NCBI RefSeq assembly: GCF_963506605.1 | Contig: NC_083283.1 | Location: 16,554,001 to 16,618,000 of the forward strand | DNA from: Zootoca vivipara | Lineage: Eukaryota | Direction of reading: 5' to 3' | DNA length: 64,000 nucleotides | Part shown: positions 2,797 through 58,492 of the stretch, piece by piece | Position numbering within the stretch: position 1 is the first letter of the stretch | Layout of the letters: every line of letters begins with the position of its first letter | Translations under genes and position numbers: made by a program | Notes under the pieces: generated by a model | Database searches by the model: none | The model's input: only the letters and a program-made list of their open reading frames with translations | Told to the model about the DNA's origin: nothing

Positions 2797-4917
2797 ATAC
2801 ATTATAGCTACAATTTTTAGATATTTTTAATTAAAAGGGTATCATAAAACATGCAAAGTAATCCTAATAATGTATGCTGGCAACATTGCTAATTGGTTAT
2901 AAGTTGTAAAACCTTTATTTAATTAGCACACAACTAAGATAACACCATCTTTAGTAGCAGTATTGGAGCATCGTAGTGAGATGTTATTTGATGTACACTG
3001 ACATTAATGAGTTTAATTTAACTGCCCAATCAAAGCTCATAGATATAATTAACCCTGCTAGGCTGTGACAAACAGAAACACACTGAAATAAATGTAGATA
3101 TTTAGCGGATTGGTTCCCACCGACCCCCTCCCATTTTTACAAAGCTATTTAAACACAGGAAATTTCGGACTCCTGAGTAACACAGTTTGAAGTAAATTAC
3201 GGTAGTATATAAACTGGCAAATATGGATAGAGCTCACTTTCAAAAATAGCTTGCAAATTAATTCACACCCTAATATTGCTATATTCTATCCCCCACCCCA
3301 TTATAGCAACTGCCTCTTTATGTAGTGAAAAGTATATGGGCACGGGCTTCTCATTGCCCTAGTGCAAAGCGATGGTCAGCTTTTGCTACCAAATTGCCTC
3401 TCTACGGTGTCTCATAGAACACAATAGAAGCCCTTTAGAACTGAACTGGCATTAAAAGTAAAAGCAGCAATTGACAGAAATTGAGATCAGTGGTGTGTAT
3501 CTGGCATGTATTTCCACAGTGGATTTATTCCCCTCGTCCAATCCATATCCATAATACAGTCCTAAGTTCCATTTCTTGGTGGTACTAGAAAGCATAGGAA
3601 CCAGTGGGTAGTTGAGTATGTATGTATGTATGAATGTATGAATGTTTGTATGTTCCCTTTCTTCCATGACATAACTGAATATATGAGATGATATTATCAG
3701 TGAACAGGAGTGATGAGCGGAGTGATGAGCAAGCCAAGGGAGAATCCATCCTCTCCATTCTGGCATGTGTTACACTAGCGTATAGCAAAGAGTACAAGTT
3801 TTAAAAGGCAGAAATATTCATGCAGAGATGTTATTTAATGTAACAATAGATATATGTAAGGCATTTTAGACTATCCCAGTAAAAGAGAATTGAGTGTTCA
3901 ACTTACTTGCCTGAACTTTGGGACCTTATATCATAATCATAATATTTCCTCTTGGCTTATTGAGGAGCTTACACTTCCTAGAACAGAATCATAGAGTGGG
4001 AACTTCAACCACTACTGTTCTTACGAACTAAAGGTTTCCACTTCTTATTAGACACCGAAATCATGGTGAATATTTATTCAAAATTAGATTTTTAATAGAA
4101 TAAAGCTTGAGAGGCAATCACCGACACAACTTGTTTGACTTCGAAAAAGAGGCTAGAAAGTTGTGGGGTGAAGGAGCCAGGTCAAGCAAGCAGACACCTC
4201 TGTAAAGGTGCAGGTGCTGTTAAGGAAGTTGGCTTGTTTTGCATGCTGTCTAGTCTAATGTTGGTTTAAAAATGGTGATATGCATAATTCATGAGTCACA
4301 ATCATAGTCACTTAAAACATTGATCTTCAACAAGGGGTCGTGATATCCAAGTAACTTAAGGTGGGAAGAGAAAATAGGGAGGGAGGCAGAGGAAGTTATC
4401 CTGGTCCAATAAACCATGGTTTTTCAGTCCAGCAACAAGCTGTGTGCCTCCTTCCCTCCCTCTCTGTCTCACATGTTTGGTTTCAACAAATCTGTCTTGG
4501 TTTCTTACCAACTGGGGTATCAAACCAAGATCAGATTTAAGATCTTGTAGTTTAGACGATCCTCAGTCAATATGGTCATTATTAGGTTTTTTGTGCATTC
4601 AGGGGACTCTTGAAAGTAACATAAAAAGGTGTTAGGGTGGGGAGATTTGATACTGGCTAAAGCACTTTGATACCAGCCAAACCATTTAAAGGGGGCGTTG
4701 ACACATTTTTTAATTATATAAAATTAAGGAGCCGGTTTCCAGTGCTTGCTTTGACCTTCTGTCCTCTTGATTTGAGGAAGCCATTTCTTTAAACTGTTTC
4801 CCTGCAATGGCTTGATGTGGTTCAGCAACTATAACTGGGGATTTGCACAAGCAGTTCTGCAAAGCTTTGCTTAGCAATGCTCTTTTTATTTATGATGTTA
4901 TTGTGTTTTATATGCAG

Positions 4918-5982
<1,065 letters not shown>

Positions 5983-13457: not shown

Positions 13458-13487
13458 TTAACCTGTACTAGACACACACACACCAAT

Positions 13488-13578
13488 CATAGCTGCCAAG
13501 TTATCCCTTTTTTTAAAGGGATTTTCCATTATGCTGAATCGGCTTTCTCGTGAGAAAAGGGAAAACTTGCCAGCTATG
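13488..13578. mobile_element. ~90-bp hAT-type MITE (CATAGCTG TIR family)
   Basis: TIR catagctgccaagtt / aacttgccagctatg; 8-bp TSD acaccaat. Confidence 0.9.
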
Positions 13579-14434
13579 ACACCAATTGGTTCATGTGGCA
13601 GCAGAGTTTATAGAAGGGATATCTCTATCCTCTGGCTCCCATCATACCTGACCATTGGCAATGTTGGCTGGGTCTGAAGGGAATTAAAGTTCAGCAAAAT
13701 CTGGATGGGGTGAAAGGACGGTGTTCTCCAAGAAAATGTTTCCCCACTGGTTTGCAATAAGAACGTTGTCCTTGCTTTGCACCAAATCCTTGAAGTTCCC
13801 TTCTATAATTTCTTTTTTCTTTCTTTTTCGTATTATTATTGAGTCCTGTTTGGGACTCAGGGCGGCGCACACAGATAAAATGGAAAGGCAATAATTAAAA
13901 AACACTAAGATGATTAAAATAGTATTTAAAAATCCATTAAACACAGATAACAATGAACACATCACAACACCAGCCCTTTCCTCAAAAGTCAGTTCCTAAA
14001 GGCCTGTCAGAATAGAAAGGTATTTACCGACCAGCGGAAGAACAAGTAGGCAGCCAGTCTAAACTTTGGTAGGTAGCGAATTCCAAAGTTTGGGAGCAGC
14101 CATGGAGAAGTTCCTTTCCAGCATCCCCACCAAGCATGCAGGACAGGGAGAAAACTCCTTCCCCAGCTGCTCTTTGGTTCAGTTTCCATCCTGGTCCTCC
14201 TCAAAGGTGTTTGTGGTGGAGTAAACCAGGAACAGGGACTCGGTTGGATATTTTTGGAGACCCATCTCCCTGAAGCCCCAGCCAACATGACCAACAGTCA
14301 TTGATGATGGATACCATTGTCCTAACATCATCTAGAGGGTCACAAATTTCCTTCCCTCTGATATACAATGTCGACCACCACCATTTTATCTTCACAGCAG
14401 CCTGGTCTGATAGGTCTGTCTAAGAAACAGGCTG

Positions 14435-26849: not shown

Positions 26850-28178
26850 CTATGTTCTGGAGAACTCAGTACTTTTTTGTGGAAGCGCTTTCAGCTTCCT
26901 TGAACAGCCCCTTGGAAAAGGAACCCAACAATTCACTTCAACTTTTGCTTTAGGCAGAATTTCAGTGGCTTCCCCTGGTGCCAAAACAGCTCTTACTGCA
27001 TAGTGAGACACCTTCCTGGGGTTGTTTCCTCTCTCCCCAGTTACTTGAGCTGCAGCCCAGATCATCTGGAGTAGATGGTTATTACCACCCACAACTTTTT
27101 CCTTTGCTTGCTCTTGTTCCATGGGTTTTCAATCATATATATTAATGCAAAACTTTTGCCTCTCTCTCTTTCTCTCGTTCCAAAATGGTTATTATTTCCT
27201 AGCTTTGAGAGTGTAACTATGACTTAACTAATTTGTATTGAAAGGCATTCTCAGCTGTTGGGATTGAACCATAGCCACAGAAAGGGGCGGGGAGGCAAAG
27301 GCAGAGCTGGATTGCAGAGCTGTAATTCCTGGCTCCAGTGCATAGGTTCAGGCCACAGAGAACATCCCCAGTATTCCCAAGTATGATCTTTAAGAAGTGC
27401 TGAAGACAAGGGTTAGTGTAGGCATATGCGATCTTGGCAGAAGCCGTGTTTCACTTTATAGCAATGGCAAGCCGACTCTGTTCAATCTGTTTCCATTTGC
27501 TGGTCAAATTTCTTAAAGGTTCCCTTCAAAGGGGCAGCCAATGCTATTAGCATTACTCAGATCATTTCCTCAGTAGCTACTTTAGAGGATGATATATCAC
27601 TCCAGTCCTCGGTTTCCTTTCGTTTCGAGAGTGGGAAGAGATAGCTGAAAATTGGATTCTGGATTCCCTGATACCGGGCTACGGTGCAGGAATCAACCGC
27701 AGGACATGTTTCTTATGGAATTGCCATACATCACTGGGTAGACGGCTGTGGCCTACAAATAAAACAAACCATGCAATACACACAAATGGATGTAATAAAG
27801 CTCTGACTATTTGCAGTGGGGTGGGGTGAGGGACGGACGGACGGACGGACACACACACACCTCTGGAGGTGGTTGTGATTTTGAGCGAAGCAGCACACAC
27901 TTAACCTTTTTACCTTGCACCACGTAAACAGGCCTCCTCAAGCTGCATCTGGATCGCCACAGTAAGGAAAAACAGCTGGGGCAATATGTGTGGATGGGGA
28001 AACCTGTGGCCTTTCAATTGTCCTTGGACTCCAACTCCCATCAGCCCCCAAGCCAACGTGGCCAATAGTCAGTGATAATGGGAATTGTAGTCCGGCAATA
28101 TCTGGACTACAAACCTGATGTAGAGAAACAGGTAGGAGCACCTTGGTCTTCTGCTACTCCTCCACTCAGAACTGCAAC

Positions 28179-28356
28179 CAGGGCCGTCTCAAGCACGTCG
28201 GGCACCCTGGCGCCATGGTGCGGAGATCACTCCGGCGCCCCCCGCCCCGCTCCGTTTCTTGCCGCGGCTGGTGGGCGGGCACAGCACGCAGCATGATTTA
28301 CACGCTGCTCTGCTGTGCAGCGCCCCCCCCCCAGCCTACCCCTAGAGCCGGCCCTG
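28179..28356. mobile_element. GC-rich hAT MITE (CAGGGCC TIR family)
   Basis: TIRs plus 8-bp TSD actgcaac. Confidence 0.9.
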
Positions 28357-28489
28357 ACTGCAACTTCCAAAGATGACCTTTCTTTTTCTTTCTTCTCATT
28401 GCATTTCTATCTATCCTACCTTTCCCACAAGGAGCAAAAGGGGGAACACATTTTATAGTACACACATCTACAAAAAGCGTATACTTTCC

Positions 28490-28687
28490 CAGTGTTTTTC
28501 AACCTTTTTTGGGCAAAGGCAAACTTGTTTCATGAAAAAATTCACGAGGCACACCACCATTAGAAAATGTTAAAATTTTTAAACTCTGTGCCTATATTGA
28601 CTATATATAAAGTAATTCTCCCACGGCACACCAGGCAAGATCTCGCGGCACACTAGTGTGCCGCGGAACAGTGGTTGAGAAACACTG
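28490..28687. mobile_element. hAT non-autonomous element
   Basis: cagtgtttttcaacc / ggttgagaaacactg; 8-bp TSD tactttcc. Confidence 0.9.
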
Positions 28688-28889
28688 TACTTTCCCCTTA
28701 AAAAGATAGGAAATAGGTAGGATTCCCACCCCCGCAATGCCTCTTTCCAGCCCTTACTACAAGAAAACCTCTCAGAGGTGGCATTCATCAGACACTCTGA
28801 CTTCTCCTATTCCAGACAAATTTAACAGGCAGGTAAAAATGCATGTGTGACTTTTCCGTCTAGAAAGGGTTAAACCCAGTTTTCAAAGA

Positions 28890-34623: not shown

Positions 34624-34970
34624 GGGCCATTATGTCATTGAACAGCTGCTACAAAAACTAAGGACTAATTAACTGGAATAGAGTTACTATCGTAGTCTTT
34701 TAATGATATTCTATTTGATTTACAGGGAAGATCCTTAAAAAATGCCTATATGGCATGTTGTCCCCCCCCCCCAACTGGGCACAGCAGCATCAAAAGTGAC
34801 TTCTGAGCATGCTCCGCCCAGTTCCAAAATGGCGGCAGCGCTACTTCCGGTATGCTACTTCCGGTCCGGTCCCTTATTTTTCAGAGAGGAATTTGGCAGG
34901 TATGCTTTCCCCACAATTTAAAGACAGCAGCTTCCACTCAATACAGTAGTGGCTGGTGGGGTAGAGTGGG
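34624..34970 (+). repeat. Composite local duplication of three downstream segments
   Basis: 34624-34737=34968-35079; 34747-34774=35241-35267; 34773-34970=36957-37154. Confidence 0.9.
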
Positions 34971-36742
34971 CCATTATGTCATTGAACAGCTGCTACAAAA
35001 ACTAAGGACTAATTAACTGGAATAGTTACTATCGCAGTCTTTTAATGATATTCTATTTGATTTACAGGGAAGATCCTTATAAAAGAAAACTGAATGATGC
35101 TGGTGTCAATGTACGCCCCAAAAGATAATCAAAAACTCTTTAATTTTTAAAAGAAAACTATTTGAGAATGTTAGGAGGGCAGAGGTTAATTAGATGAGTT
35201 TCCAGCAGTGTGATGGATAAATAATGGGCCACATCCTAAATATATGGCATGTTGTCCCCCCCCCCAAGTCAACCTTGATCAACAGTTTATAATTTAATTG
35301 ATACACAGAAGAGAATTAATGAAGGACCAAGAAATTTTACATCACTCTGACAGGACCAAACAATATGTGATGTTAATCATGTAGCAGGGTTTTTTTTTGA
35401 GGTGCGGTTGTTTTGGTAATACAAATTAAATGCTGCTGATCGTTGGAGCTTTCAATAATAATCAGGGTTTTGCGAGCCCCAAGGAGCAACTGATTTGCAG
35501 TGCTTGCGACCCCTGCTTTCGGCCCAGCTGTGTCTTCATCTACCCCATTCCTGACTTCATATATGACATCAGGCGTTGTGCAAGTGGCCATGGCTTGACC
35601 AGAAATCTCATAAGCCAAATGAGGAGCCCCCCCTGGCTGATGGTAAGGTTGCACAAGGCTGGCTTTTATCATCCCTTTTTATGTATGAATGGAGAACAAC
35701 CCAGTCAAGCAAAAAGTCAGGCTTCTCCATTGACTAGGAAAGTGCCTTAAAGTTTAATTCAACGTTACTTACACTTACAGCGAAAAAAAGGACAGAAATA
35801 AGCCGTTGTAAAACCAGTGAATACTTTTACCTCGTCTAAAGCCACTCTTGAGAGAGATTATACTAAGAAGATTACAAAAAATATGACATTGGTCATATTT
35901 TCCTCCTGGGCGCGTAGAAAACAAATACATCTTCGCTTTTTCCTCTCCTTCCTTTCCCACCCCACCCAACTCTTGGGGGAAAACTAGGTGTGTGTATATG
36001 TGTGTTTATATTACCACGAAGGCTTAGGTTGTCATTTCATTAAAGAGCATGATTGGCATAAGTTTGGGGAAACCTCCTTGCAGGCTTAATTCCATACTCT
36101 CAGGACAATGCTAATTTTTTCCAAATGCTACAGCTGGCACTATCTTTCTCAGTTAGCTAAGAGTTGTCTATTGTATTGGCTACTCACCAGATTTATGGTC
36201 TTTCTCAAGCAGACGGAAATGCTCATTTTTTCCAGTTTTCCAAAGGGTAATAAAACATTTGTCATTGATCTTAGTTCCCAGGTCCCTTGTGAGTCTGACA
36301 TAGGCCAAACCTTCTCACAGTTTTGTAAATGATGATATTTTAAGAGCCTGGCTTTCCTTTCAGGCTAATACAGGGACAAAGGGCCCTTGTATCGGGCACT
36401 GGACATAATATGTAATAAAGAGGAACATGCAGAGTAAATTCTCATGATAATGTTCTACAGCAGGCATCCCCAAACTTCGGCCCTCCAGATGTTTTGGACT
36501 ACAATTCGCATCTTCCCTGACCTAGGGATCGTGTAAGCAGCAAGGTTTCCGGGGCAAATGGTGTCTCGATTTTCAAAGGGAAATGGAGAAAAAACTCACT
36601 ACCTAAATTAAAACATCACCACTGCCACCTGTCTGTCTGCTAGCCTCTTTTGAAATGCCCTAAGATAAGGAGTTCTCTCTTCCCTGCCAGAATTAAGCTA
36701 ACCAATGGAATGAGCTTCAGCCTACCCATTACCTCCCTTTCC

Positions 36743-37088
36743 CATAGCTGCCAAGTCTCCTGTATTCCCCGGGAAACCCCCCTTTTTCCAGCTGTCCCCA
36801 GCCAAAAAAACAGATTTTTTTTGTTTCCCCCCGGTTTATTCTGGCGCGGCGGCCATTTTGGAACTGGGCGGAGCATGCTCAGAAGCGACTTTTGATGCTG
36901 CTCTGCCCAGTTCCAAAATGGCTGCAGCGCGACTTCTGGTGCGGTGGCCATTTTGGAACTGGGCACAGCAGCATCAAAAGTCACTTCTGAGCATGCTCCG
37001 CCCAGTTCCAAAATGGCGGCAGCGCTACTTCCGGTATGCTACTTCCGGTCCGGTCCCTTATTTTTCAGAGAGGAACTTGACAGGTATG
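36743..37088. mobile_element. hAT-type element with CATAGCTG/CAGGTATG TIRs and internal inverted repeats
   Basis: TIR catagctgccaagt / acttgacaggtatg; repeated ccattttggaactgggc / gcccagttccaaaatgg. Confidence 0.8.
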
Positions 37089-43189: not shown

Positions 43190-44236
43190 TATACACCCCA
43201 CTAGAGGCATTATCAGAGCTCAAGGACACATTCCAGGCAGGCAAAAACATTTGGGGGTTCAAAGCTGTTTGGGGCATGGCCTGAGAAGAGAAGGAATGGT
43301 TTAGGGAGAGTTTCAAAGGGCAGAGAGAGCAGCTTGGAGGTCTAAGATTCCCCATACTGGAAGCTGACCAGGCTTTCACCTGCCAGGGATCTGGAGAGGG
43401 AAATCTGTGGCACAGATCTTCCCAAGCACCTTCCCTGCAGTCTCAGGAGCAATAGAAACTCATGCATGCAAACATAATAGACAGGCAATACAGAGACTTC
43501 CTGTACAGTCTCTATCACTTTAAAAAAAACTAAGCAAAACCCCACACTACAAACACACCTAAGCTGGGACAGATGTAAGTGACTGAATTATTGATTGCTA
43601 TCACTTCTTTCTTTCTTCTTTATAACAGTTTCAGGCTACTAGACTCAATCTTACCTTTTCGCCCTTGGTGTGTGAAGAGTCAGTGAATAACTTTGACAAG
43701 TTGTTATTTGGCCTTGAGTTGCCAGCATGGTGTGAACAGATGAGAAGACCGTCATTTTCTGTTCAAGAGAAGAAATGGGGGGAAACACAGGAGAATTACA
43801 TTTCTGCCTGATGACTGCTAGCTATCTAATCACACCACAAGGACACTGACCCCTTGCTTTAAAGGAGAATAACCTTATGATTTCCACAAGAAATTATTAA
43901 TGGGCTGTTATTCAGGTATGCCTTGCATCCATAATAAATAAGACAGTCGCACACAGCTCACTTGCTCCTACATTCATGTAAAGGAAAGTGTAATGACAGG
44001 ACAGTTGTACATAAATCTGTTGAGCGGCAATTATTCTCCTTTCTGCAGCCACCCAATCCCTTTCCTTCTCCCCATAAAGCAATTTAGGAAGAGGGAGATC
44101 AGGCCAGGTGTATTACTACCCTGGGTAGTAAGGTAGCTACTGCATTGGGAAATTCAAATTTCTGACATTGAGCAGAGCCAAATATTCATACCACACTGCA
44201 CAAGTGTTTTCTGTTGCCATTTTCCTGTTCCATGCA

Positions 44237-44451
44237 TAGGGTTGCCAGACTCAATAGAGGACAGGACTTCTGTGTCTTTAATTGCCCTGCTCTCTTTTGA
44301 GTCTGGAAACCTTAAAGAGAAACCAGCAGACCCTTCGTTTAATTTCCAAGCAAAGGGTCTGCTGGTTTCTCTCTAAGGTTTCCAGACTCAAAAGAGAGCA
44401 GGGCAATTAAAGGCACAGAAGTCCTGTCCTCTATTAAGTATGGCAACCCTA
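44237..44451. mobile_element. 215-bp fully palindromic hAT MITE (TAGGGTTGCCA TIR)
   Basis: ~100-bp near-perfect arms; 8-bp TSD tccatgca. Confidence 0.92.
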
Positions 44452-45252
44452 TCCATGCACCCTACTGCCTTGACTCTCCATAATTTGGTGAGTTTATTTC
44501 TTCTGGCCTGGGGGCAATGCTTTCCCCCCTTTTTTCTTTTAATCCCACCAGCCTAATTGTCCATAAAAATTCTCAAATCCCAGTATCAGATTTCTGAGAG
44601 TTAATGGAGCTGCTTCTTTTCTCAGCTGTTAGGGCATTAGTCTTGAGAAGAGGTCACCAGTAAAGTCAAGCTTTCTGCTTTAATGATTACCTCTAAGACG
44701 CTGGATTATGAACAAGTAGCTGTGACCAATCTGAATGTAAATGGGAGATAGAAAGTACTGATCGTTTTAAAGAGATGTTTCAAATTGCAATCCTGTGTTT
44801 GTTATCTGAACCAGCATGTCAGCACAAAGGCCATATTTAACACAATCCTCTTCCTTTCCGGGGGGGGGGGGATATCTGATTGAGAAAAAGCCTCAGCCAT
44901 TGTTAAGAACAGAAGCCATCCATGCAAAGGTTTCCTGCACAGCAAAAGGGGTCATCATGCAGACGTATTAGCAATCATGGTAATAAAAGTTTATTTCCAA
45001 ATTTCTAGGTGTAAAGTAAGTGGTAAGTAGTACTTACTGAAATCCATTAGGGCTTCCTTTTCTGCACCGATGTGGCAGCCATCCTTTCTTGGAGGGAAAG
45101 GACAGCTGTGGTCATGATTGCTGCTGATTCTCCAGCTGTATAGCCCAGCTCACTCTTGGTGTAGCTGCACCTGTATTCAAGAGAGTGCATAGAAATTCAA
45201 TACTGTAGCTTTTATTGCAATTATCTGTATGTTTTTACCGTAATAGATCTTT

Positions 45253-47227: not shown

Positions 47228-47590
47228 CCTGGATAGCTCAGTCGGTAGAGCAGAGCTTTCCAAACTTTTCATGTTGGGGACACAATTTTTAGACATGCAT
47301 CATTTCATGACACAGCAATTCAGTTTTACTATCAAACCAGAGGATAAACTAACCCCTTTCCAGCCCCGGGGGAAGCATGGTGAGCATTTGCACGACACAC
47401 CTACACACTACAGCCGACACACTAACGTGTTGTGACACACAGTTCAGAAAGCTCTGCGGTAGAGCATGAGACTCTTAAATGCTGGGTCATGGGTTGAAGC
47501 CCCACGTTGGGCAAAAGAGTCCTGCATTGCAGGGGGTTGGAGCAGATGACCCTTGTGGTCCCTTCTACTGATACAACGATATGATCCTAT
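47228..47590 (+). mobile_element. tRNA(Lys)-like SINE with CR1-type tail, interrupted by a hAT element
   Basis: cctggatagctcagtcggtagag|catgagactcttaa...gggttgaagccccacgttgggc...cctgcattgcagggggttgg. Confidence 0.85.
47251..47456. mobile_element. hAT non-autonomous element
   Basis: cagagctttc / gaaagctctg TIR; 8-bp TSD cggtagag. Confidence 0.9.
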
Positions 47591-47721
47591 CTGTATGTCA
47601 TATCTGTGTGGAGACATGGAAGACGACAAACTTAGGGGTCAGGAAGGATAGGAGAAAATCTTTGGCAGTGATATAGAATATGTACCTAGAGAGGACTGCT
47701 GCTAACAGTTGGGCAATATCA

Positions 47722-48520
47722 AGCAGCATCTTCCCCGGCCACGGTCACCACCTGCGCTCTGTGGCGGCGAGGCGCGTGGGGCTTAGAGAGCAGCAGCCCC
47801 TTCCCCCCACCTGCCCCTCAGGCGCTTTCCCACCTTCCTCTTCCTCCCTCCTCAGTCAGCGGCGGCGGCAGAGGCACCACCCCCCTGCCACCCTCCCTCT
47901 CGGCCAGGCGGCGCACAGGTGGCGAAGCTCGAGGCTGAGGGGCACGCTGGCGGCGACCAGCGCTAAGAGTGCTCGCCGTTGCCCACCGGCCATGGCCCTC
48001 CCGCCGCTGTTGCTGTGGCATCAGCCTGCTGCTGCTGCGCCTCCTGCTGCTGCTGCTGGGTGCCTCTGCCTCGGCGGGGGCGGCCCCGCCGTGACCCTCC
48101 TCACCACCCAGGGTGGACTCGGTGCAGGGGCTGGCCTGGTGCGCCTCAGTGGTGATCGAGGGCAAGGTGCTATCTCACAGCGTGGTGGAGCCAGGAGGAG
48201 GCGGAGGCGGCGGAGGAGGAGGGGAAGAAGCAACGTCGCTGTTGCTACTGCTGCCGCCGCCACCACCGCTCCTCACCCTGTCAGAGCAGCAGCAGCCGAC
48301 TGCCGCCTCTGCTTCCAGCACCTCCTTCTCAGGGAGTGTCCCCTCGCCCTCGCCAGCTCCCAGGGCGCCGGTGCTGAGCCCCAGCCTGCCCAGCCCGAGC
48401 CCACCGCCCATTTCCTGGGTGACTCGGGTGCATGTGCACCAGGTGTGGCCAGCCAAAAGTGGCGGGCTTTTTGCTTATGGGGGGCAGGTGCCCCCCTGCC
48501 CTGCGCTGGGTACGCCCATG
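47722..48520 (+). mobile_element. 3' part of a Pack-type hAT element (now inverted relative to its 5' part)
   Basis: Ends ...ggggggcaggtgcccccctgccctgcgctgggtacgcccatg, followed by atcccagg (48521-48528). Confidence 0.8.
47917..48468 (+). pseudogene. NRG1: Captured, decayed fragment of the NRG1 type II (GGF2) first exon
   Basis: LLLLLLGASASAGAAPP*PSSPPRVDSVQGLAWCASVVIEGKV ... RVHVHQVWPAKSGGL matches recalled GGF2 LLLLLGTAALAP...CYSSPPSVGSVQELAQRAAVVIEGKV ... LVKVHQVWAVKAGGL; in-frame TGA at 48092-48094 where GGF2 has Cys; cut off by the TE end. Confidence 0.85.
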
Positions 48521-48528
48521 ATCCCAGG

Positions 48529-48757
48529 AGCAAAGGGGGGACAAATGCAGAGAGCAAAGGCAGAAGCTAAGGGCTCCCAGGTTCCTGTCATGTTGGCGCC
48601 AATCGAGACACGCGCCACTTCCGGATTCTGATTCGGACTAGAGAAGTCATGGACTTTTTAGCTCTGTCTTGTACATATGTATATAATGAAACTCTGTAAA
48701 AACCAACTACGGAGTTTGGAGCCTCTTACTTGTGAGAAGCCTACAAGTGCCCTTACA
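48529..48757 (+). mobile_element. 3' part of a solo LTR (in the inverted segment)
   Basis: Ends ...cccttaCA, followed by 5-bp ggtcc (48758-48762). Confidence 0.65.
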
Positions 48758-48821
48758 GGTCCAGTCTCTGGGGTTGCGGCGCTCATCTTGCTTTACTGGC
48801 CGAGGGAGCCAGCATTTGTCC
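48758..48821 (-). mobile_element. Sauria SINE body fragment (its tail is at 49572-49603, + strand)
   Basis: ggtccagtc.tctggggttgcggcgctcatcttgctttactggccgagggagcc continues the reverse complement of the tail ggacctaacggtcagg...acctttaccttt. Confidence 0.8.
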
Positions 48822-48907
48822 CTCTTTGCATTTCCAATATCTGTCCCGACAACCTTCACTCAGCCATACCTTGTATTTCTGGGAAATGGTACATTCTAGC
48901 CTCTGCT

Positions 48908-49297
48908 GGCAGGAGCAGCTCCTGCAGTGGCTGAAGCTGACTGACGGAGGAGAGGCAGGGAGGCGGCAGAGTGAAAGAGAGGCCCTTTGGTGTGGTGCCA
49001 GGCTCCCTAAAGGTCCAATCCCATGGCGCGATCCTATCGCCCTCACCCACCCTGCCACCCCCTCTCGCCTGCCCGACCCTCCCATCCTCTCCAGCCAAGC
49101 AGGGTAGCCTCCGACGCCGCCAGCCCCAGAAGCACAAGGTGGCCGCTGCAGCCGCCGCCACCGCAGTGTCGTCGGGCCCGCTGGCCCTGTAGCCCCGCCC
49201 ACATTCACACTTTGTGGCGCCTCCCCTCCCGTGCCTTGGCCCCACCCCTGAACGACCATGGCTTGCCCCCCCTGATTTGATCCTGGGTATGCCCCTG
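48908..49297 (-). mobile_element. 5' part of the Pack-type hAT element, carrying GC-box/CCAAT-rich DNA
   Basis: Reverse complement begins caggggcatacccagg (13/15 match to the other TIR); flank 49298-49305 cctgggat is the reverse complement of atcccagg. Confidence 0.8.
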
Positions 49298-49305
49298 CCT
49301 GGGAT

Positions 49306-49571
49306 GAAGGGGTGGGAACGTAGCTTCCCCCCGCCCAGAACTGCTAAACTGTTGAGCATGTTCTCTGGTTTCTGACACTTCTCCCTCTGCAGCGCTCAGG
49401 TCCGACACTTCCGATCTTCCCCACTGCTCCTGTGATCTGTCAACATCCCCTGGGCTCTTCCCCACTGCAGGAGCCTTGGCACCAACCTCTGGGAGATGCT
49501 CTGAGGCGGCAGCATCTTGCAACCCTTCCACCAATCCGTTGGACTCCCTGACCCCTGGTGGTCCTCTGACA
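49306..49571 (-). mobile_element. 5' part of the solo LTR
   Basis: Reverse complement starts TGTCA and is preceded by ggtcc (from 49572-49576), matching the 5-bp TSD at 48758. Confidence 0.65.
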
Positions 49572-49606
49572 GGACCTAACGGTCAGGCGTACCTTTACCT
49601 TTATAG

Positions 49607-49905
49607 TAAAAGGTAAAGGGACCCCTGACCATTAGGTCCAGTTGCGGATGACTCTGGGGTTGCGGTGCTCATCTCGCGTTATTGGCCGAGGAAGCTGGCG
49701 TACAGCTTCCGGGTCATGTGGTCAGCATGGCAAAGCCGCTTCTGGCAAACCAGAGTAGTGCACGGAAACGCCGTTTACCTTCCCGCCGGAGCGGTACCTA
49801 TTTATCTACTTGCACTTCGACGAGCTTTCGATCTGCAGGAGCAGGGACCAAGCAACGAGAGCTCACTCCGTTGCGGGAATTCGAACTGCCGACCTTCTGA
49901 TCGGC
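49607..49905 (-). mobile_element. Sauria SINE
   Basis: aaaggtaaagggacccctgaccattaggtcc...gaattcgaactgccgaccttctgatc. Confidence 0.9.
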
Positions 49906-51193
49906 AATTCACCCTGAGTGCTACACAGGCATTAGGAAGTTGGGGCAGACATTTTTCTATCCCCCAAAATTAAATGCATTTTCACCCAGTCGCCGCAACC
50001 AGTTTTCAAATAATGAAAATGTTTGAATCTCCATTTAGAATGAATAAAGGCTGTGAAAAGCAATGGACCAGGAAAAGTTAAGTCAAAATTGGAAGGAAGC
50101 TTAGTGATGGTACCCTGAGTTCCCTTCTTGTATTCCCAACCCAACACCACCATTTGGGTGATGAACTGGAAGAAATAGAAGATTCCAGAATGTATTGGAG
50201 TCTGTACAAGCTTATGCACGCTGACACTTCTTTTTGGCTCTCCCCTTCCAGGAATTTTTCAACTGCCATATGAAAAAAGATGTCAACCACGAGGTATAAT
50301 TCTACTGCTATTTCACTTTTACATCCTCTCCAACCACCCACCTTACTCTGGCGACTTTTACTAACAAGTGAGCCAAGCAGCTTCTGCAAATGTGCTTTAA
50401 AGGCAATACTATAATTTTAACAATTCTGAAAGTTGTTGGCCTAGTTGTGTTTTTTCTCTCTCTCTTTACTGAGGTGGCAAGCCAGAGTTTGGCCTGTACA
50501 ACATCCGAAGGCTGGTTGGAATATGACTGAATGTGCTTCTATTAAAAGCAATAATTACGGTACCTGCACATAGAAAACTAATATATCTGGCAATGTGCAA
50601 GGCTAGAATTATTTTACCTGACATCTGTTTTTTAATATGAACAGGGGTTTTGCTCTGTTTCATATGGAGGAACATTCAGTCAGTGAGCCCTCACCTGAAA
50701 GCTGAACTAGTTTAGCAGCTCAGTGAAATGTAGGCCACTATTTCTTCATTGTGTCTATATAGTTTATGCTGGAAGTGCAACAGCAGGGATCATTCATTTG
50801 GTAACTTAAGGGGTTAATTCTGCTCAGTGTTAGTCAGCTACCCAAGATGGGTGGTCATGGAGCTGTTGCTTAACAACCGGCTAGGGTGATGTGATCTTCA
50901 TTGAGGTAGCATGTGTCCTGATTGGCTATGTAGTTTTGAGAAAGTTTTCTCTTGTATGTTTAGCTGAATGTTCTCCCAGCTATGTACAAAGCCTAATGGA
51001 ATAAAGACAAAACTTTTCTGTTCCTTTCTCCTCAAATTATACACTGTTTTTTGTCTTGACCCACCAGTATCAGCATTTATTTTCTCTCCAGACTCCATCT
51101 GCATTATTTAAGTAACTTTGCTTACAGATTTGTATGTAAATCTGTATGTAAATATATGTAAATTTGTATGTAAATATATGTAAATTGTATGTA

Positions 51194-57903: not shown

Positions 57904-58175
57904 AAAATCATAGTAAGGGTGGGGGAACTTTTTCTTTCTGAGAGCTGCATTTCTTCATGGCCAAAGGCAAAAGTGGTTGGAACAATGGATGTGCTTCTTT
58001 TGTATAGTAGGATGCACTGAAGTCATCTAAAACTAAGATGTTTCTACACATACAAACATACCTTTCCATCATCCGTCAGAGCAAATAAGAGGGCATTGTC
58101 ACATTTCAATGACACATCCCAGAAGTGGAAAGCACTCCAGGAGAGTGTGCAGCAGAATTAGGGAGGGGTTTGATC

Positions 58176-58362
58176 CATAGCTGCCAAGTTCTCCCTTTTT
58201 TAAAGGGAAATTTCCTTATGCTGAATAGGCTTCCTCGCGAGAAAAGGGAAAACTTGGCAGCTATGGTTTGATCACAGCTGTCAATTTCTCCCTTTTTTAA
58301 AGGGAATTTTCCTTATGCTGAATAGGCTTCCTCTCGAGAAAAGGGAAAACTTGACAGCTATG
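58176..58362. mobile_element. Two adjacent CATAGCTG-family MITEs (58176-58265, 58273-58362)
   Basis: TIRs; TSDs gtttgatc and ggtttgat. Confidence 0.9.
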
Positions 58363-58492
58363 GGTTTGATATGGAGAGAGGACAGGGCCAAAGAGAGTCC
58401 CAAGGATCAAAGAGAGGCTTGGAGGACCACATGTGGCCCCTGGGACTAAGATTCCCCATCCATTCCTTCTCTACTGTGTTTTATATTGCATT

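What the first reader, a model, noticed from the sequence alone, without database searches (positions are those of the whole stretch)
47722..49305. Pack-type hAT transposon carrying a captured NRG1 type II (GGF2) exon-1 fragment downstream of TRPS1
Seen: a GC/CpG-rich island translates to a signal-peptide-like Leu run followed by SSPPRVDSVQGLAWCASVVIEGKV and VHVHQVWPAKSGGL, then runs directly into a TE end (ctgggtacgcccatg, 48506-48520). A second end (rc caggggcatacccag, 49283-49297) matches it 13/15, and the two outer flanks give the same 8-mer, atcccagg (48521-48528; rc of 49298-49305). Known: the peptide matches the GGF2-specific N-terminal domain of NRG1 (from recall; VHQVW favours NRG1 over NRG2), and 8-bp TSDs with short CA-starting TIRs typify hAT. 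Inference: a ~1.2-kb non-autonomous hAT captured genomic DNA around NRG1 exon 1 and moved it. Pack-type capture is well known in plants but seldom documented in amniotes. The ORF is dead (TGA 48092 at a Cys position, a frameshift, no ATG before RWR at 47917).
Basis: partly seen in the sequence, partly recalled or inferred. Interest (0 to 1): 0.92.

Follow-up and report, generated by a model that had tools for sequence, protein, structure and literature searches.

The report
Lizard hAT transposon carrying NRG1 exon-1 copy
A 1.2-kb cut-and-paste (hAT-type) transposon about 42 kb downstream of TRPS1 in a lacertid lizard carries a dead copy of the upstream region and first two thirds of the neuregulin-1 type II first exon and was later split by a small inversion; it is a real but already described kind of gene-fragment capture.

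Summary
The peptide is a broken copy of the NRG1 type II first exon, 88.8% identical at the protein level to the intact exon of Podarcis lilfordi.

Whole-genome read depth is about 2 in unique flanks. It rises to 330-1000 on both transposon arms, exactly up to the two inverted-repeat ends. It is 3-11 on the cargo, so the arms belong to a family of several hundred copies and the cargo exists in a few copies.

One inversion of about 1.2 kb, when undone, restores four things:
- one SINE;
- one ~500-bp solo LTR with TG..CA ends and a 5-bp target duplication;
- the hAT element with its inverted repeats and 8-bp duplication;
- the gene order of the cargo.

- The inversion runs about 47690-48904, not 47722-48907.
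- The lizard start codon is kept, at 47992.
- Pack-type hAT capture is documented in vertebrates (Tan et al. 2021: 208 Pack-hATs), though none in the one lizard genome they scanned.
- This scan has already noted more than a dozen similar captures elsewhere in this genome.

No RNA covers the cargo in the one run I laid. Verdict: a new member of a known kind, of moderate interest.

The parts
47690..47991 (+). Cargo, inner part: non-coding DNA from just upstream of the NRG1 type II start codon (promoter/5'UTR-like, GC 69%, CpG o/e 0.65)
   Evidence: tblastn of P0001 residues 54-307 covers 47699-48469 in one frame, E 2e-67. P0001 is an ORF call that reads through the upstream DNA of a squamate NRG1 exon 1. 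A paralogous X1 contig covers 47698-47869 at about 88%.
47992..48469 (+). Cargo: dead copy of the NRG1 type II (GGF2) exon-1 coding sequence. The ATG at 47992 is kept, a net 1-nt frameshift follows in the first few codons, TGA 48092-48094 sits at a Cys codon, and the copy is cut after KSGGL.
   Evidence: 88.8% aa identity to P0011 (Podarcis lilfordi), whose exon continues RKDGLLWVLL... Pfam NRG2_N matches only profile positions 26-42, at 17.2 bits.
48470..48520 (+). hAT right arm (~51 bp), with the terminal inverted repeat at 48506-48520
   Evidence: X13 depth is 333 at 48502, against 12 at 48433 and 16 at 48551. It aligns with the other end over about 30 nt.
48521..48528 (+). Target-site duplication, copy 1 (atcccagg)
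48529..48757 (+). Solo LTR, 3' part (TATA-like motif, ends ...CA)
   Evidence: Depth is 50-190, so it is a repeat family of its own. It ends in CA next to the GGTCC duplication.
48758..48821 (+). SINE body fragment, starting with the 5-bp LTR target duplication GGTCC (48758-48762)
   Evidence: 85-91% identical to four other SINE copies in the window, and continues where the head piece 49572-49602 stops
48822..48904 (+). Single-copy spacer that lay outside the SINE before the inversion. The right inversion breakpoint lies within 48899-48913.
   Evidence: Depth is 3.3. cctct at 48900-48904 is the reverse complement of agagg at 47690-47694.
48905..48999 (-). Cargo, outer part: the most upstream piece of the captured NRG1 5' region
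   Evidence: Depth is 6.4, so it is not part of the high-copy arm. P0001 residues 19-45 match 48979-48914 on the minus strand (E 0.017, weak), upstream of and in frame with the main match once the inversion is undone.
49000..49297 (-). hAT left arm (~298 bp, GC 68%), with the terminal inverted repeat at 49283-49297
   Evidence: X13 depth is 685-1012 across it and 374 at 49290, falling to 23 at 49333. Most family reads carry C at 49290, which makes the inverted repeat 14/15.
49298..49305 (-). Target-site duplication, copy 2 (cctgggat on +)
   Evidence: The match of an X1 contig from a paralogous LTR copy stops exactly at 49298 (record 7).
49306..49571 (-). Solo LTR, 5' part (starts TG in its own sense)
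   Evidence: Depth is 15-55. TG..CA ends and flanking GGACC.
49572..49602 (-). SINE head, including the second copy of the 5-bp LTR target duplication (ggacc, 49572-49576)
   Evidence: Aligns to positions 1-31 of the SINE copies in the window
47687..47698 (.). Left inversion breakpoint interval
   Evidence: Homology to the native upstream region begins by 47699. An exact X1 contig covers 47527-47715, and an organism-B contig covers 47595-47788 at 95%; both span the breakpoint.

Best explanation
A non-autonomous hAT-type DNA transposon acquired about 875 bp of genomic DNA from the start of the neuregulin-1 gene. Its own sequence is a ~298-bp left arm and a ~51-bp right arm with 15-bp inverted ends. 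The cargo is roughly 400 bp of upstream/5'UTR DNA plus the first 478 bp of the type II (GGF2) first-exon coding sequence. The copy is DNA-level, not a retrocopy.

The composite element of about 1,224 bp then inserted by cut-and-paste into a solo LTR that itself sits inside a SINE. That insertion made the 8-bp duplication atcccagg. Later an inversion of about 1.2 kb (about 47690-48904) flipped the right three quarters of the element together with half of the LTR and part of the SINE. That is why both inverted-repeat ends now read on the + strand.

The cargo is a pseudogene: it has a frameshift, a stop codon and a truncation. It shows no transcription in the one RNA run laid.

Shown here: the ends, the duplications, the repeat status of the arms, the identity of the cargo, and the inversion. 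Inferred: that the cargo travelled with the element, rather than being copied into a transposon already resident here, and the hAT superfamily assignment.
For: - Cargo identity. phmmer gave E 4e-30 to 2e-11 against squamate proteins. These include XP_033029696 from Lacerta agilis. The closest is Podarcis lilfordi P0011, at 88.8% over 152 aligned residues. Full-length proteins with this domain plus Ig, EGF and neuregulin domains are named pro-neuregulin-1.
- DNA-level capture. One-frame collinear homology to P0001 runs from 47699, about 290 bp upstream of the ATG, to 48469.
- Transposon ends. The repeat is 13/15 (14/15 against the family majority base) and degenerate similarity extends to about 30 nt. 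The exact 8-bp duplication adds to this, and chance gives the configuration about 8 times in 3000.
- Repeat family. X13 depth is 1.7-3.3 in unique flanks, 333-374 at the end-proximal sites and 685-1012 in the left arm. It falls to 16-36 just outside both ends. A paralogous LTR contig's match stops exactly at 49298.
- Cargo copy number. Depth is 3-11, and up to six paralogous X1 contigs cover 48336. One paralog contig ends at 48464, next to the cargo/arm junction, as expected if a high-copy repeat follows there too. The Zootoca model XP_060133487 contains another copy of the fragment.
- Inversion. The SINE halves lie in opposite orientation and abut in SINE coordinates. The LTR has TG..CA ends with a GGTCC/GGACC duplication. 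The cargo order is restored in frame when the inversion is undone. The left junction is present in an exact X1 contig and in organism B.
- Genome background. At least eight ordinary MITEs with perfect 8-bp duplications lie in the same window.
Against: - No second cargo-bearing copy was seen with its own ends and a different target duplication. Copy number rests on roughly 1x read depth at 80% likeness in GC-rich DNA, where stray alignments are possible.
The capture breakpoints are therefore known only to about 20 bp on the left side.
- The match of the outer cargo piece (48914-48979) to P0001 is weak by itself (E 0.017).
- No transposase or autonomous partner was found. The right end starts CATGG rather than the usual hAT CAGNG-type start.
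- The right inversion junction is not covered by an exact independent contig.
Confidence: 0.8

Rival explanations
1. In-situ gap filling. An ordinary hAT MITE of about 350 bp inserted into the LTR and made the 8-bp duplication. Later, repair of a break inside it copied the NRG1 fragment in from the native locus. The cargo never moved as part of the element.
For: Tan et al. 2021 (PMC8277862) conclude that most vertebrate Pack-TIRs are single-copy and arose this way. The ends and the target duplication fit this reading equally well. No other cargo-bearing copy was seen directly.
Against: - Cargo depth is 3-11 against about 2, and there are up to six paralogous contigs.
- One paralog contig terminates at the cargo/arm junction.
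- A further dispersed copy sits in a Zootoca WAP-gene model.
Confidence: 0.13
2. No transposon capture at all. A plain segmental or ectopic duplication of NRG1 exon 1 landed between unrelated repeats, and the inverted-repeat/duplication pattern is chance.
For: A 13/15 match alone is expected by chance in a few kb. The 8-mers share cctggg/cccagg with the neighbouring 15-mers.
Against: - The joint configuration arises in about 0.3% of simulations.
- Read depth steps by about 10- to 20-fold at exactly these two ends.
- The family majority base improves the repeat to 14/15.
- The cargo ends within a few bases of where the high-copy arm begins.
Confidence: 0.03
3. The inversion is an assembly error, and the element is intact and collinear in the real genome.
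For: The right junction (48899-48913) has no exact independent contig. GC-rich repeats are error-prone in assembly.
Against: An exact X1 contig spans the left junction (47527-47715), though X1 may be the sample the assembly came from. A 95%-identical contig from a different species (organism B) spans 47595-47788. No reads supporting the uninverted joint were listed, although only the best-supported joints were shown.
Confidence: 0.04

Closest known systems
Pack-hAT / Pack-TIR elements of animals (Tan et al. 2021, Nat Commun 12:4280, PMC8277862), for example Pack-hAT-N8_XT of Xenopus tropicalis carrying 291 bp of the CAPSL 5'UTR
   Same: Both are non-autonomous hAT elements with intact ends and an 8-bp duplication whose interior is a DNA-level copy of a host gene's GC-rich 5' end. 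The cargo is non-functional and there are probably a few copies.
   Different: This one is in a squamate; that survey found 0 Pack-TIRs in its only lizard genome, anoCar2. The cargo is longer (~875 bp), includes a coding first exon with its signal peptide, and was later split by an inversion. Multicopy status is inferred here from read depth, not from separate loci.
Pack-MULEs of rice and other plants
   Same: Both are terminal-inverted-repeat transposons carrying gene fragments, with a preference for GC-rich 5' ends of genes (established knowledge).
   Different: The superfamily differs (Mutator, with 9-10-bp duplications and long inverted repeats), and Pack-MULEs number in the thousands. Here the element is hAT-type with 15-bp repeats.
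NRG1 type II (GGF2) first exon; Pfam NRG2_N (PF25518)
   Same: The signal-peptide Leu run, the SSPP.VDSVQGLA..ASVVIEGKV block and the V.VHQVWPAKSGGL block are collinear with lacertid, snake, gecko and Anolis NRG1 type II N-termini.
   Different: The copy is truncated at profile position ~42 of 90, frameshifted and stopped. It scores below the Pfam threshold and is not joined to the Ig/EGF exons.
Other first-exon captures noted by this scan in the same genome (OSBPL10, MCAT, EPB41L4B, ALOX5, UNC13B, ATXN7L2, TRIM24 and others)
   Same: Same genome, same kind of cargo (CpG-rich upstream region plus first exon), and often hAT-type with read-depth signs of amplification (AI notes, not checked here).
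   Different: The cargo gene differs. I could not test whether the transposon family is the same. Only this one is reported as nested in an LTR within a SINE and then inverted.

Membership tests
hAT superfamily (non-autonomous member) | 8-bp target-site duplication | tested here: met
   atcccagg at 48521-48528 and its reverse complement at 49298-49305 match 8/8 once the inversion is undone. This is one copy only.
hAT superfamily (non-autonomous member) | Short terminal inverted repeats (about 10-25 bp) with a YARNG-type start | tested here: inconclusive
   The repeat is 13/15, or 14/15 with the family majority base at 49290. The left end starts CAGGG, which fits; the right end starts CATGG, which deviates at position 3.
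hAT superfamily (non-autonomous member) | The termini belong to a multicopy family | tested here: met
   Depth is 333-1012 on the arms against about 2 in unique flanks, with sharp drops outside both ends.
hAT superfamily (non-autonomous member) | An autonomous partner encoding a hAT transposase with the same termini | not testable with these tools
   No lizard genome or repeat library could be searched. There are no Pfam hits in the arm ORFs and no protein hits for the arm.
Pack-TIR (gene-fragment-carrying TIR transposon) | The interior is replaced by host-gene DNA with an identifiable parent | tested here: met
   47699-48469 is collinear with NRG1 type II upstream DNA plus exon 1 of squamates. 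The parent was identified through proteins, not through this genome's DNA.
Pack-TIR (gene-fragment-carrying TIR transposon) | The transposon arms are absent from the parent locus at the cargo boundaries | tested here: met
   This holds for the right boundary only. The native exons P0011 and P0003 continue RKDGLLWVLL after KSGGL, where the window switches to the high-copy arm. The left boundary was not testable.
Pack-TIR (gene-fragment-carrying TIR transposon) | Multicopy: the same arm/cargo junctions at several loci with different duplications | tested here: inconclusive
   Cargo depth is 3-11x, six paralogous contigs cover one position, one contig ends at the junction, and Zootoca has a copy. 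No second locus was read.
NRG1 type II N-terminal domain (Pfam NRG2_N, PF25518) | Score above the Pfam gathering threshold (27 bits) | tested here: not met
   The window piece scores 17.2 bits on profile positions 26-42 only, because the copy is truncated. The native homologues score 49-55 bits.
NRG1 type II N-terminal domain (Pfam NRG2_N, PF25518) | NRG1 rather than NRG2 origin | tested here: inconclusive
   All full-length hits carrying the domain with Ig/EGF/neuregulin domains are named pro-neuregulin-1, including Anolis sagrei. Full-length NRG2 (about 850 aa, from my own knowledge) lay outside the length range searched. Exon-1-only models are auto-named neuregulin-2-like.
Solo LTR of an LTR retroelement | TG..CA ends, 4-6-bp target duplication, multicopy, no internal genes | tested here: met
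   In its own sense the LTR reads TGTCAGAGG...CCCTTACA and is flanked by GGTCC (48758-62) and ggacc (49572-76) within one SINE. Depth is 15-190. Continuity across the hAT insertion site was not tested against another copy.

The most novel reading that the evidence does not exclude
This element may be one product of a genome-wide habit of lacertid DNA transposons (hAT and others): picking up CpG-island promoters with first exons and amplifying them. That would be a vertebrate counterpart of rice Pack-MULEs. Some cargo copies may even be exonised into host genes; the Zootoca 'perlwapin-like' model has an N-terminal part that contains 33 NRG1-derived residues.
Probability: 0.4. Interest if true: 0.65.

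Novelty: new member of a known kind. Interest (0 to 1): 0.36.

Why it matters
Capture of gene fragments by DNA transposons shuffles promoters and exons. It is well studied in plants. In vertebrates it is catalogued mostly as single, non-amplified cases, and not in squamates.

This locus is a clean, datable example. It has four ordered events: SINE, then LTR, then hAT with cargo, then inversion. It is shared by two species. Its cargo is a CpG-rich promoter plus a signal-peptide exon.

On its own it changes little. Together with the many similar notes for this genome, it points to lacertids as a place to study how and why first exons are captured and amplified.

Tried and rejected
I could not fetch the native NRG1 exon-1 DNA of Lacerta agilis or the Zootoca perlwapin-like locus.
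- The search for homologous proteins with the 126-aa cargo piece found only P0003. With the left-arm translation it found nothing. Pfam on five ORFs of the arms and upstream cargo found nothing.
- A literal search of papers for the inverted-repeat sequence gave only unrelated primer hits.
- No other copy of the hAT arms or of the LTR lies in the 64-kb window.
- A 13-nt inverted duplication (tagaat(at)gtacc) next to both inversion breakpoints looked like a staggered-break signature. Equally good matches occur in 24% of random window pairs, so I do not rely on it.
- A retrocopy is rejected. The copy includes about 400 bp of upstream DNA, stops inside exon 1 and has no poly(A).
- The native NRG1 locus is rejected. 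The copy is truncated, nested in repeats, and lies 42 kb downstream of the TRPS1 last exon.
- The joined (un-inverted) element was not sent to any search tool. Its pieces were searched by reference, and only a 22-codon stretch across the junction was translated locally.
- The masked N stretches were left alone.

Full report
**1. Observation**

- ctgggtacgcccatg lies at 48506-48520 and ctgggtatgcccctg at 49283-49297. Both are on the + strand and match 13/15. They are the only matches with 2 or fewer mismatches in the window.
- atcccagg lies at 48521-48528 and its reverse complement at 49298-49305.
- The region is 69-72% GC against 44% for the window. CpG observed/expected is 0.52-0.65 in the cargo against 0.34 for the window.
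- The TRPS1 claim also holds. ORF 4843-5982 (+) ends in the Ikaros-type double zinc finger typical of the TRPS1 C-terminus. I recognised that from knowledge, not from a search. Its masked N stretch was left untouched.

**2. Identity of the cargo**

A phmmer search of the stop-free piece 48095-48472 against 1.8 billion representatives gave nine hits. The best were P0001 (4e-30), P0002 (5e-17) and P0003 (2e-11).
- P0003 is XP_033029696 of Lacerta agilis, auto-named 'pro-neuregulin-2-like'.
- A second search with P0001 found many full-length proteins in which this N-terminal domain is followed by Ig, EGF and neuregulin domains. All of these are named pro-neuregulin-1, including one from Anolis sagrei.
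- Exon-1-only models tend to be named neuregulin-2-like, after the Pfam domain NRG2_N. Full-length NRG2 was outside the length range searched. NRG1 is therefore well supported but not formally separated from NRG2.
- The closest named relative is P0011 of Podarcis lilfordi, at 88.8% identity over 152 aligned residues. Lacerta is at 80.9%.
- Where all three have residues, the window copy shares 6 states with Podarcis only and 2 with Lacerta only, and has 11 changes of its own.
- Lizard proteins start MAP..CC. That ATG is present at 47992. A net one-base shift follows within the first few codons. The TGA falls on the conserved Cys.
- Homology ends after KSGGL at 48469, whereas the native exons read on with RKDGLLWVLL.
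- Pfam NRG2_N matches the window piece only at profile positions 26-42, at 17.2 bits. That is under the 27-bit threshold, as expected for a truncated copy.

**3. The copy is DNA-level and includes upstream DNA**

P0001 is an ORF call on a 5.4-kb contig that happens to read through the DNA upstream of the start codon. tblastn places its residues 54-307 on 47699-48469 in a single frame (E 2e-67).

P0001 residues 19-45 match 48979-48914 on the minus strand. This match is weak (E 0.017), but it sits in the right order. When 48905 is joined to 47690 the two matches fall in one frame.

**4. The ends belong to a real transposon family**

I laid about 1x of raw whole-genome reads (X13) at 80% likeness.

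| Region | Depth |
|---|---|
| Unique flanks | 1.7-3.3 |
| 48502, right arm | 333 |
| 49290, left end | 374 |
| Rest of the left arm (49001-49243) | 685-1012 |
| 48433, cargo just inside the right arm | 12 |
| 48551 | 16 |
| 48569 | 36 |
| 49333 | 23 |

- Most family reads carry C at 49290, which makes the inverted repeat 14/15.
- Degenerate similarity between the two ends extends to about 30 nt.
- The match of an X1 contig from a paralogous LTR copy stops exactly at 49298.
- The full configuration (13/15 repeat plus an adjoining exact 8-mer, in any layout) arose in 8 of 3000 simulated 3-kb sequences of this composition.
- The same simple scan picks out at least eight ordinary MITEs with perfect 8-bp duplications elsewhere in the window. 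Elements with 8-bp duplications have clearly been active in this genome.
- No transposase or named family could be tied to the arms. The hAT assignment rests on the 8-bp duplication and the short CAG-type end.

**5. Cargo copy number**

- Outside two low-complexity bins, cargo depth is 3-11.
- X1 holds separate contigs about 88-90% identical to 47698-47869, 47874-48151, 48013-48167 and 48213-48464. Six variant contigs cover 48336.
- The contig over 48213-48464 ends at its own last base, a few bases before the arm begins. That fits a high-copy repeat following the cargo there as well, so it is probably another loaded element rather than the native exon.
- XP_060133487 of Zootoca vivipara ('perlwapin-like', three WAP domains) has 33 N-terminal residues derived from this NRG1 block, with substitutions different from the window's.
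- Together these points favour a small family of loaded elements, but no second locus was read directly.

**6. The inversion and the nesting**

- The SINE fragment 48758-48821 (+) and the SINE head 49572-49602 (-) are adjacent in SINE coordinates but lie in opposite orientation.
- Between them lies a ~500-bp element that reads TG...CA in its own sense. It is flanked by GGTCC and ggacc, and so is a solo LTR with a 5-bp duplication. It has its own moderate depth of 15-190.
- The hAT sits inside this LTR.
- Undoing one inversion of about 47690-48904 restores the SINE, the LTR, the hAT with its repeats and duplication, and the gene order of the cargo.
- agagg at 47690-47694 and its complement at 48900-48904 leave the exact breakpoints open by a few bases.
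- The left junction is present in an exact X1 contig (47527-47715). It is also present in a 95%-identical contig from a second species (47595-47788). The insertion and the inversion therefore predate the split of those two species and are not an assembly slip.
- The right junction lacks such a contig.
- The refined element is rc(48905-49297) plus 47690-48520, about 1,224 bp. That is 298 bp of left arm, about 875 bp of cargo and 51 bp of right arm.

**7. Function**

The RNA run X14 gave no reads on the cargo outside low-complexity bins. The 41x on the right arm comes from another family copy, because all of those reads carry three variants. The locus looks inert. This is one run of unknown tissue, so silence is not proven.

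**8. Comparison with what is known**

- Tan et al. 2021 (PMC8277862) list 370 Pack-TIRs in 100 animal genomes, 208 of them hAT.
- In that survey most are single-copy and are explained by gap filling without transposition. Only four are multicopy (three in frog, one in alligator). The parents of multicopy cases tend to be GC-rich.
- Their only lizard genome, anoCar2, yielded none, because almost no DNA-transposon consensus was annotated there.
- This scan's own notes list more than a dozen first-exon captures in this same genome. I did not check them.
- The finding is therefore a real and tidy new member of a known kind. The main open point is whether the cargo moved with the element or was filled in on the spot.

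Noticed in passing
window 4843-5982 (+): A long ORF ending in an Ikaros-type double zinc finger, which I recognise as the TRPS1 last coding exon. It contains a masked N stretch, which I left untouched.
   Followed up: partly
window 47243-47465: A hAT-type MITE of about 206 bp has TIR CAGAGCTTTCCAAAC (13/15) and an exact 8-bp duplication cggtagag. It is inserted into the tRNA-like head of another SINE, just left of the finding.
   Followed up: partly
window 13480-13587, 23920-24026, 58168-58371: Four copies of a ~91-bp MITE with TIR CATAGCTGCCAAGTT, each with a different perfect 8-bp duplication. Two of them are in tandem, sharing a boundary at 58265.
   Followed up: no
window 28171-28365, 28482-28696, 44229-44460: Three further small elements with 8-bp duplications and hAT-like ends: CAGGGCCGTCTCAAG, CAGTGTTTTTCAACC and TAGGGTTGCCAGACT.
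   Followed up: no
window 49569-49642: Two SINE heads lie head to head, forming a 34-nt, 88% palindrome with a 6-nt spacer. A second full SINE (49606-49910, +) inserted right at the head of the split one.
   Followed up: partly
P0005 (XP_060133487, Zootoca vivipara): A gene model named perlwapin-like, with three WAP domains, has about 33 N-terminal residues derived from the NRG1 type II exon-1 block. This may be exonisation of another copy of the same cargo.
   Followed up: partly
window 48434-48514, RNA run X14: About 41x of RNA reads lie on one strand of the hAT right arm, and all carry three variants (48502-48504). Another family copy is therefore transcribed somewhere in the genome.
   Followed up: no
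window 34806-36998: An 8-mer AGCATGCT recurs three times next to 14-15/15 repeats (CCGCCCAGTTCCAAA and CAGAAGCGACTTTTG). This looks like a larger or composite TIR element of about 2 kb.
   Followed up: no
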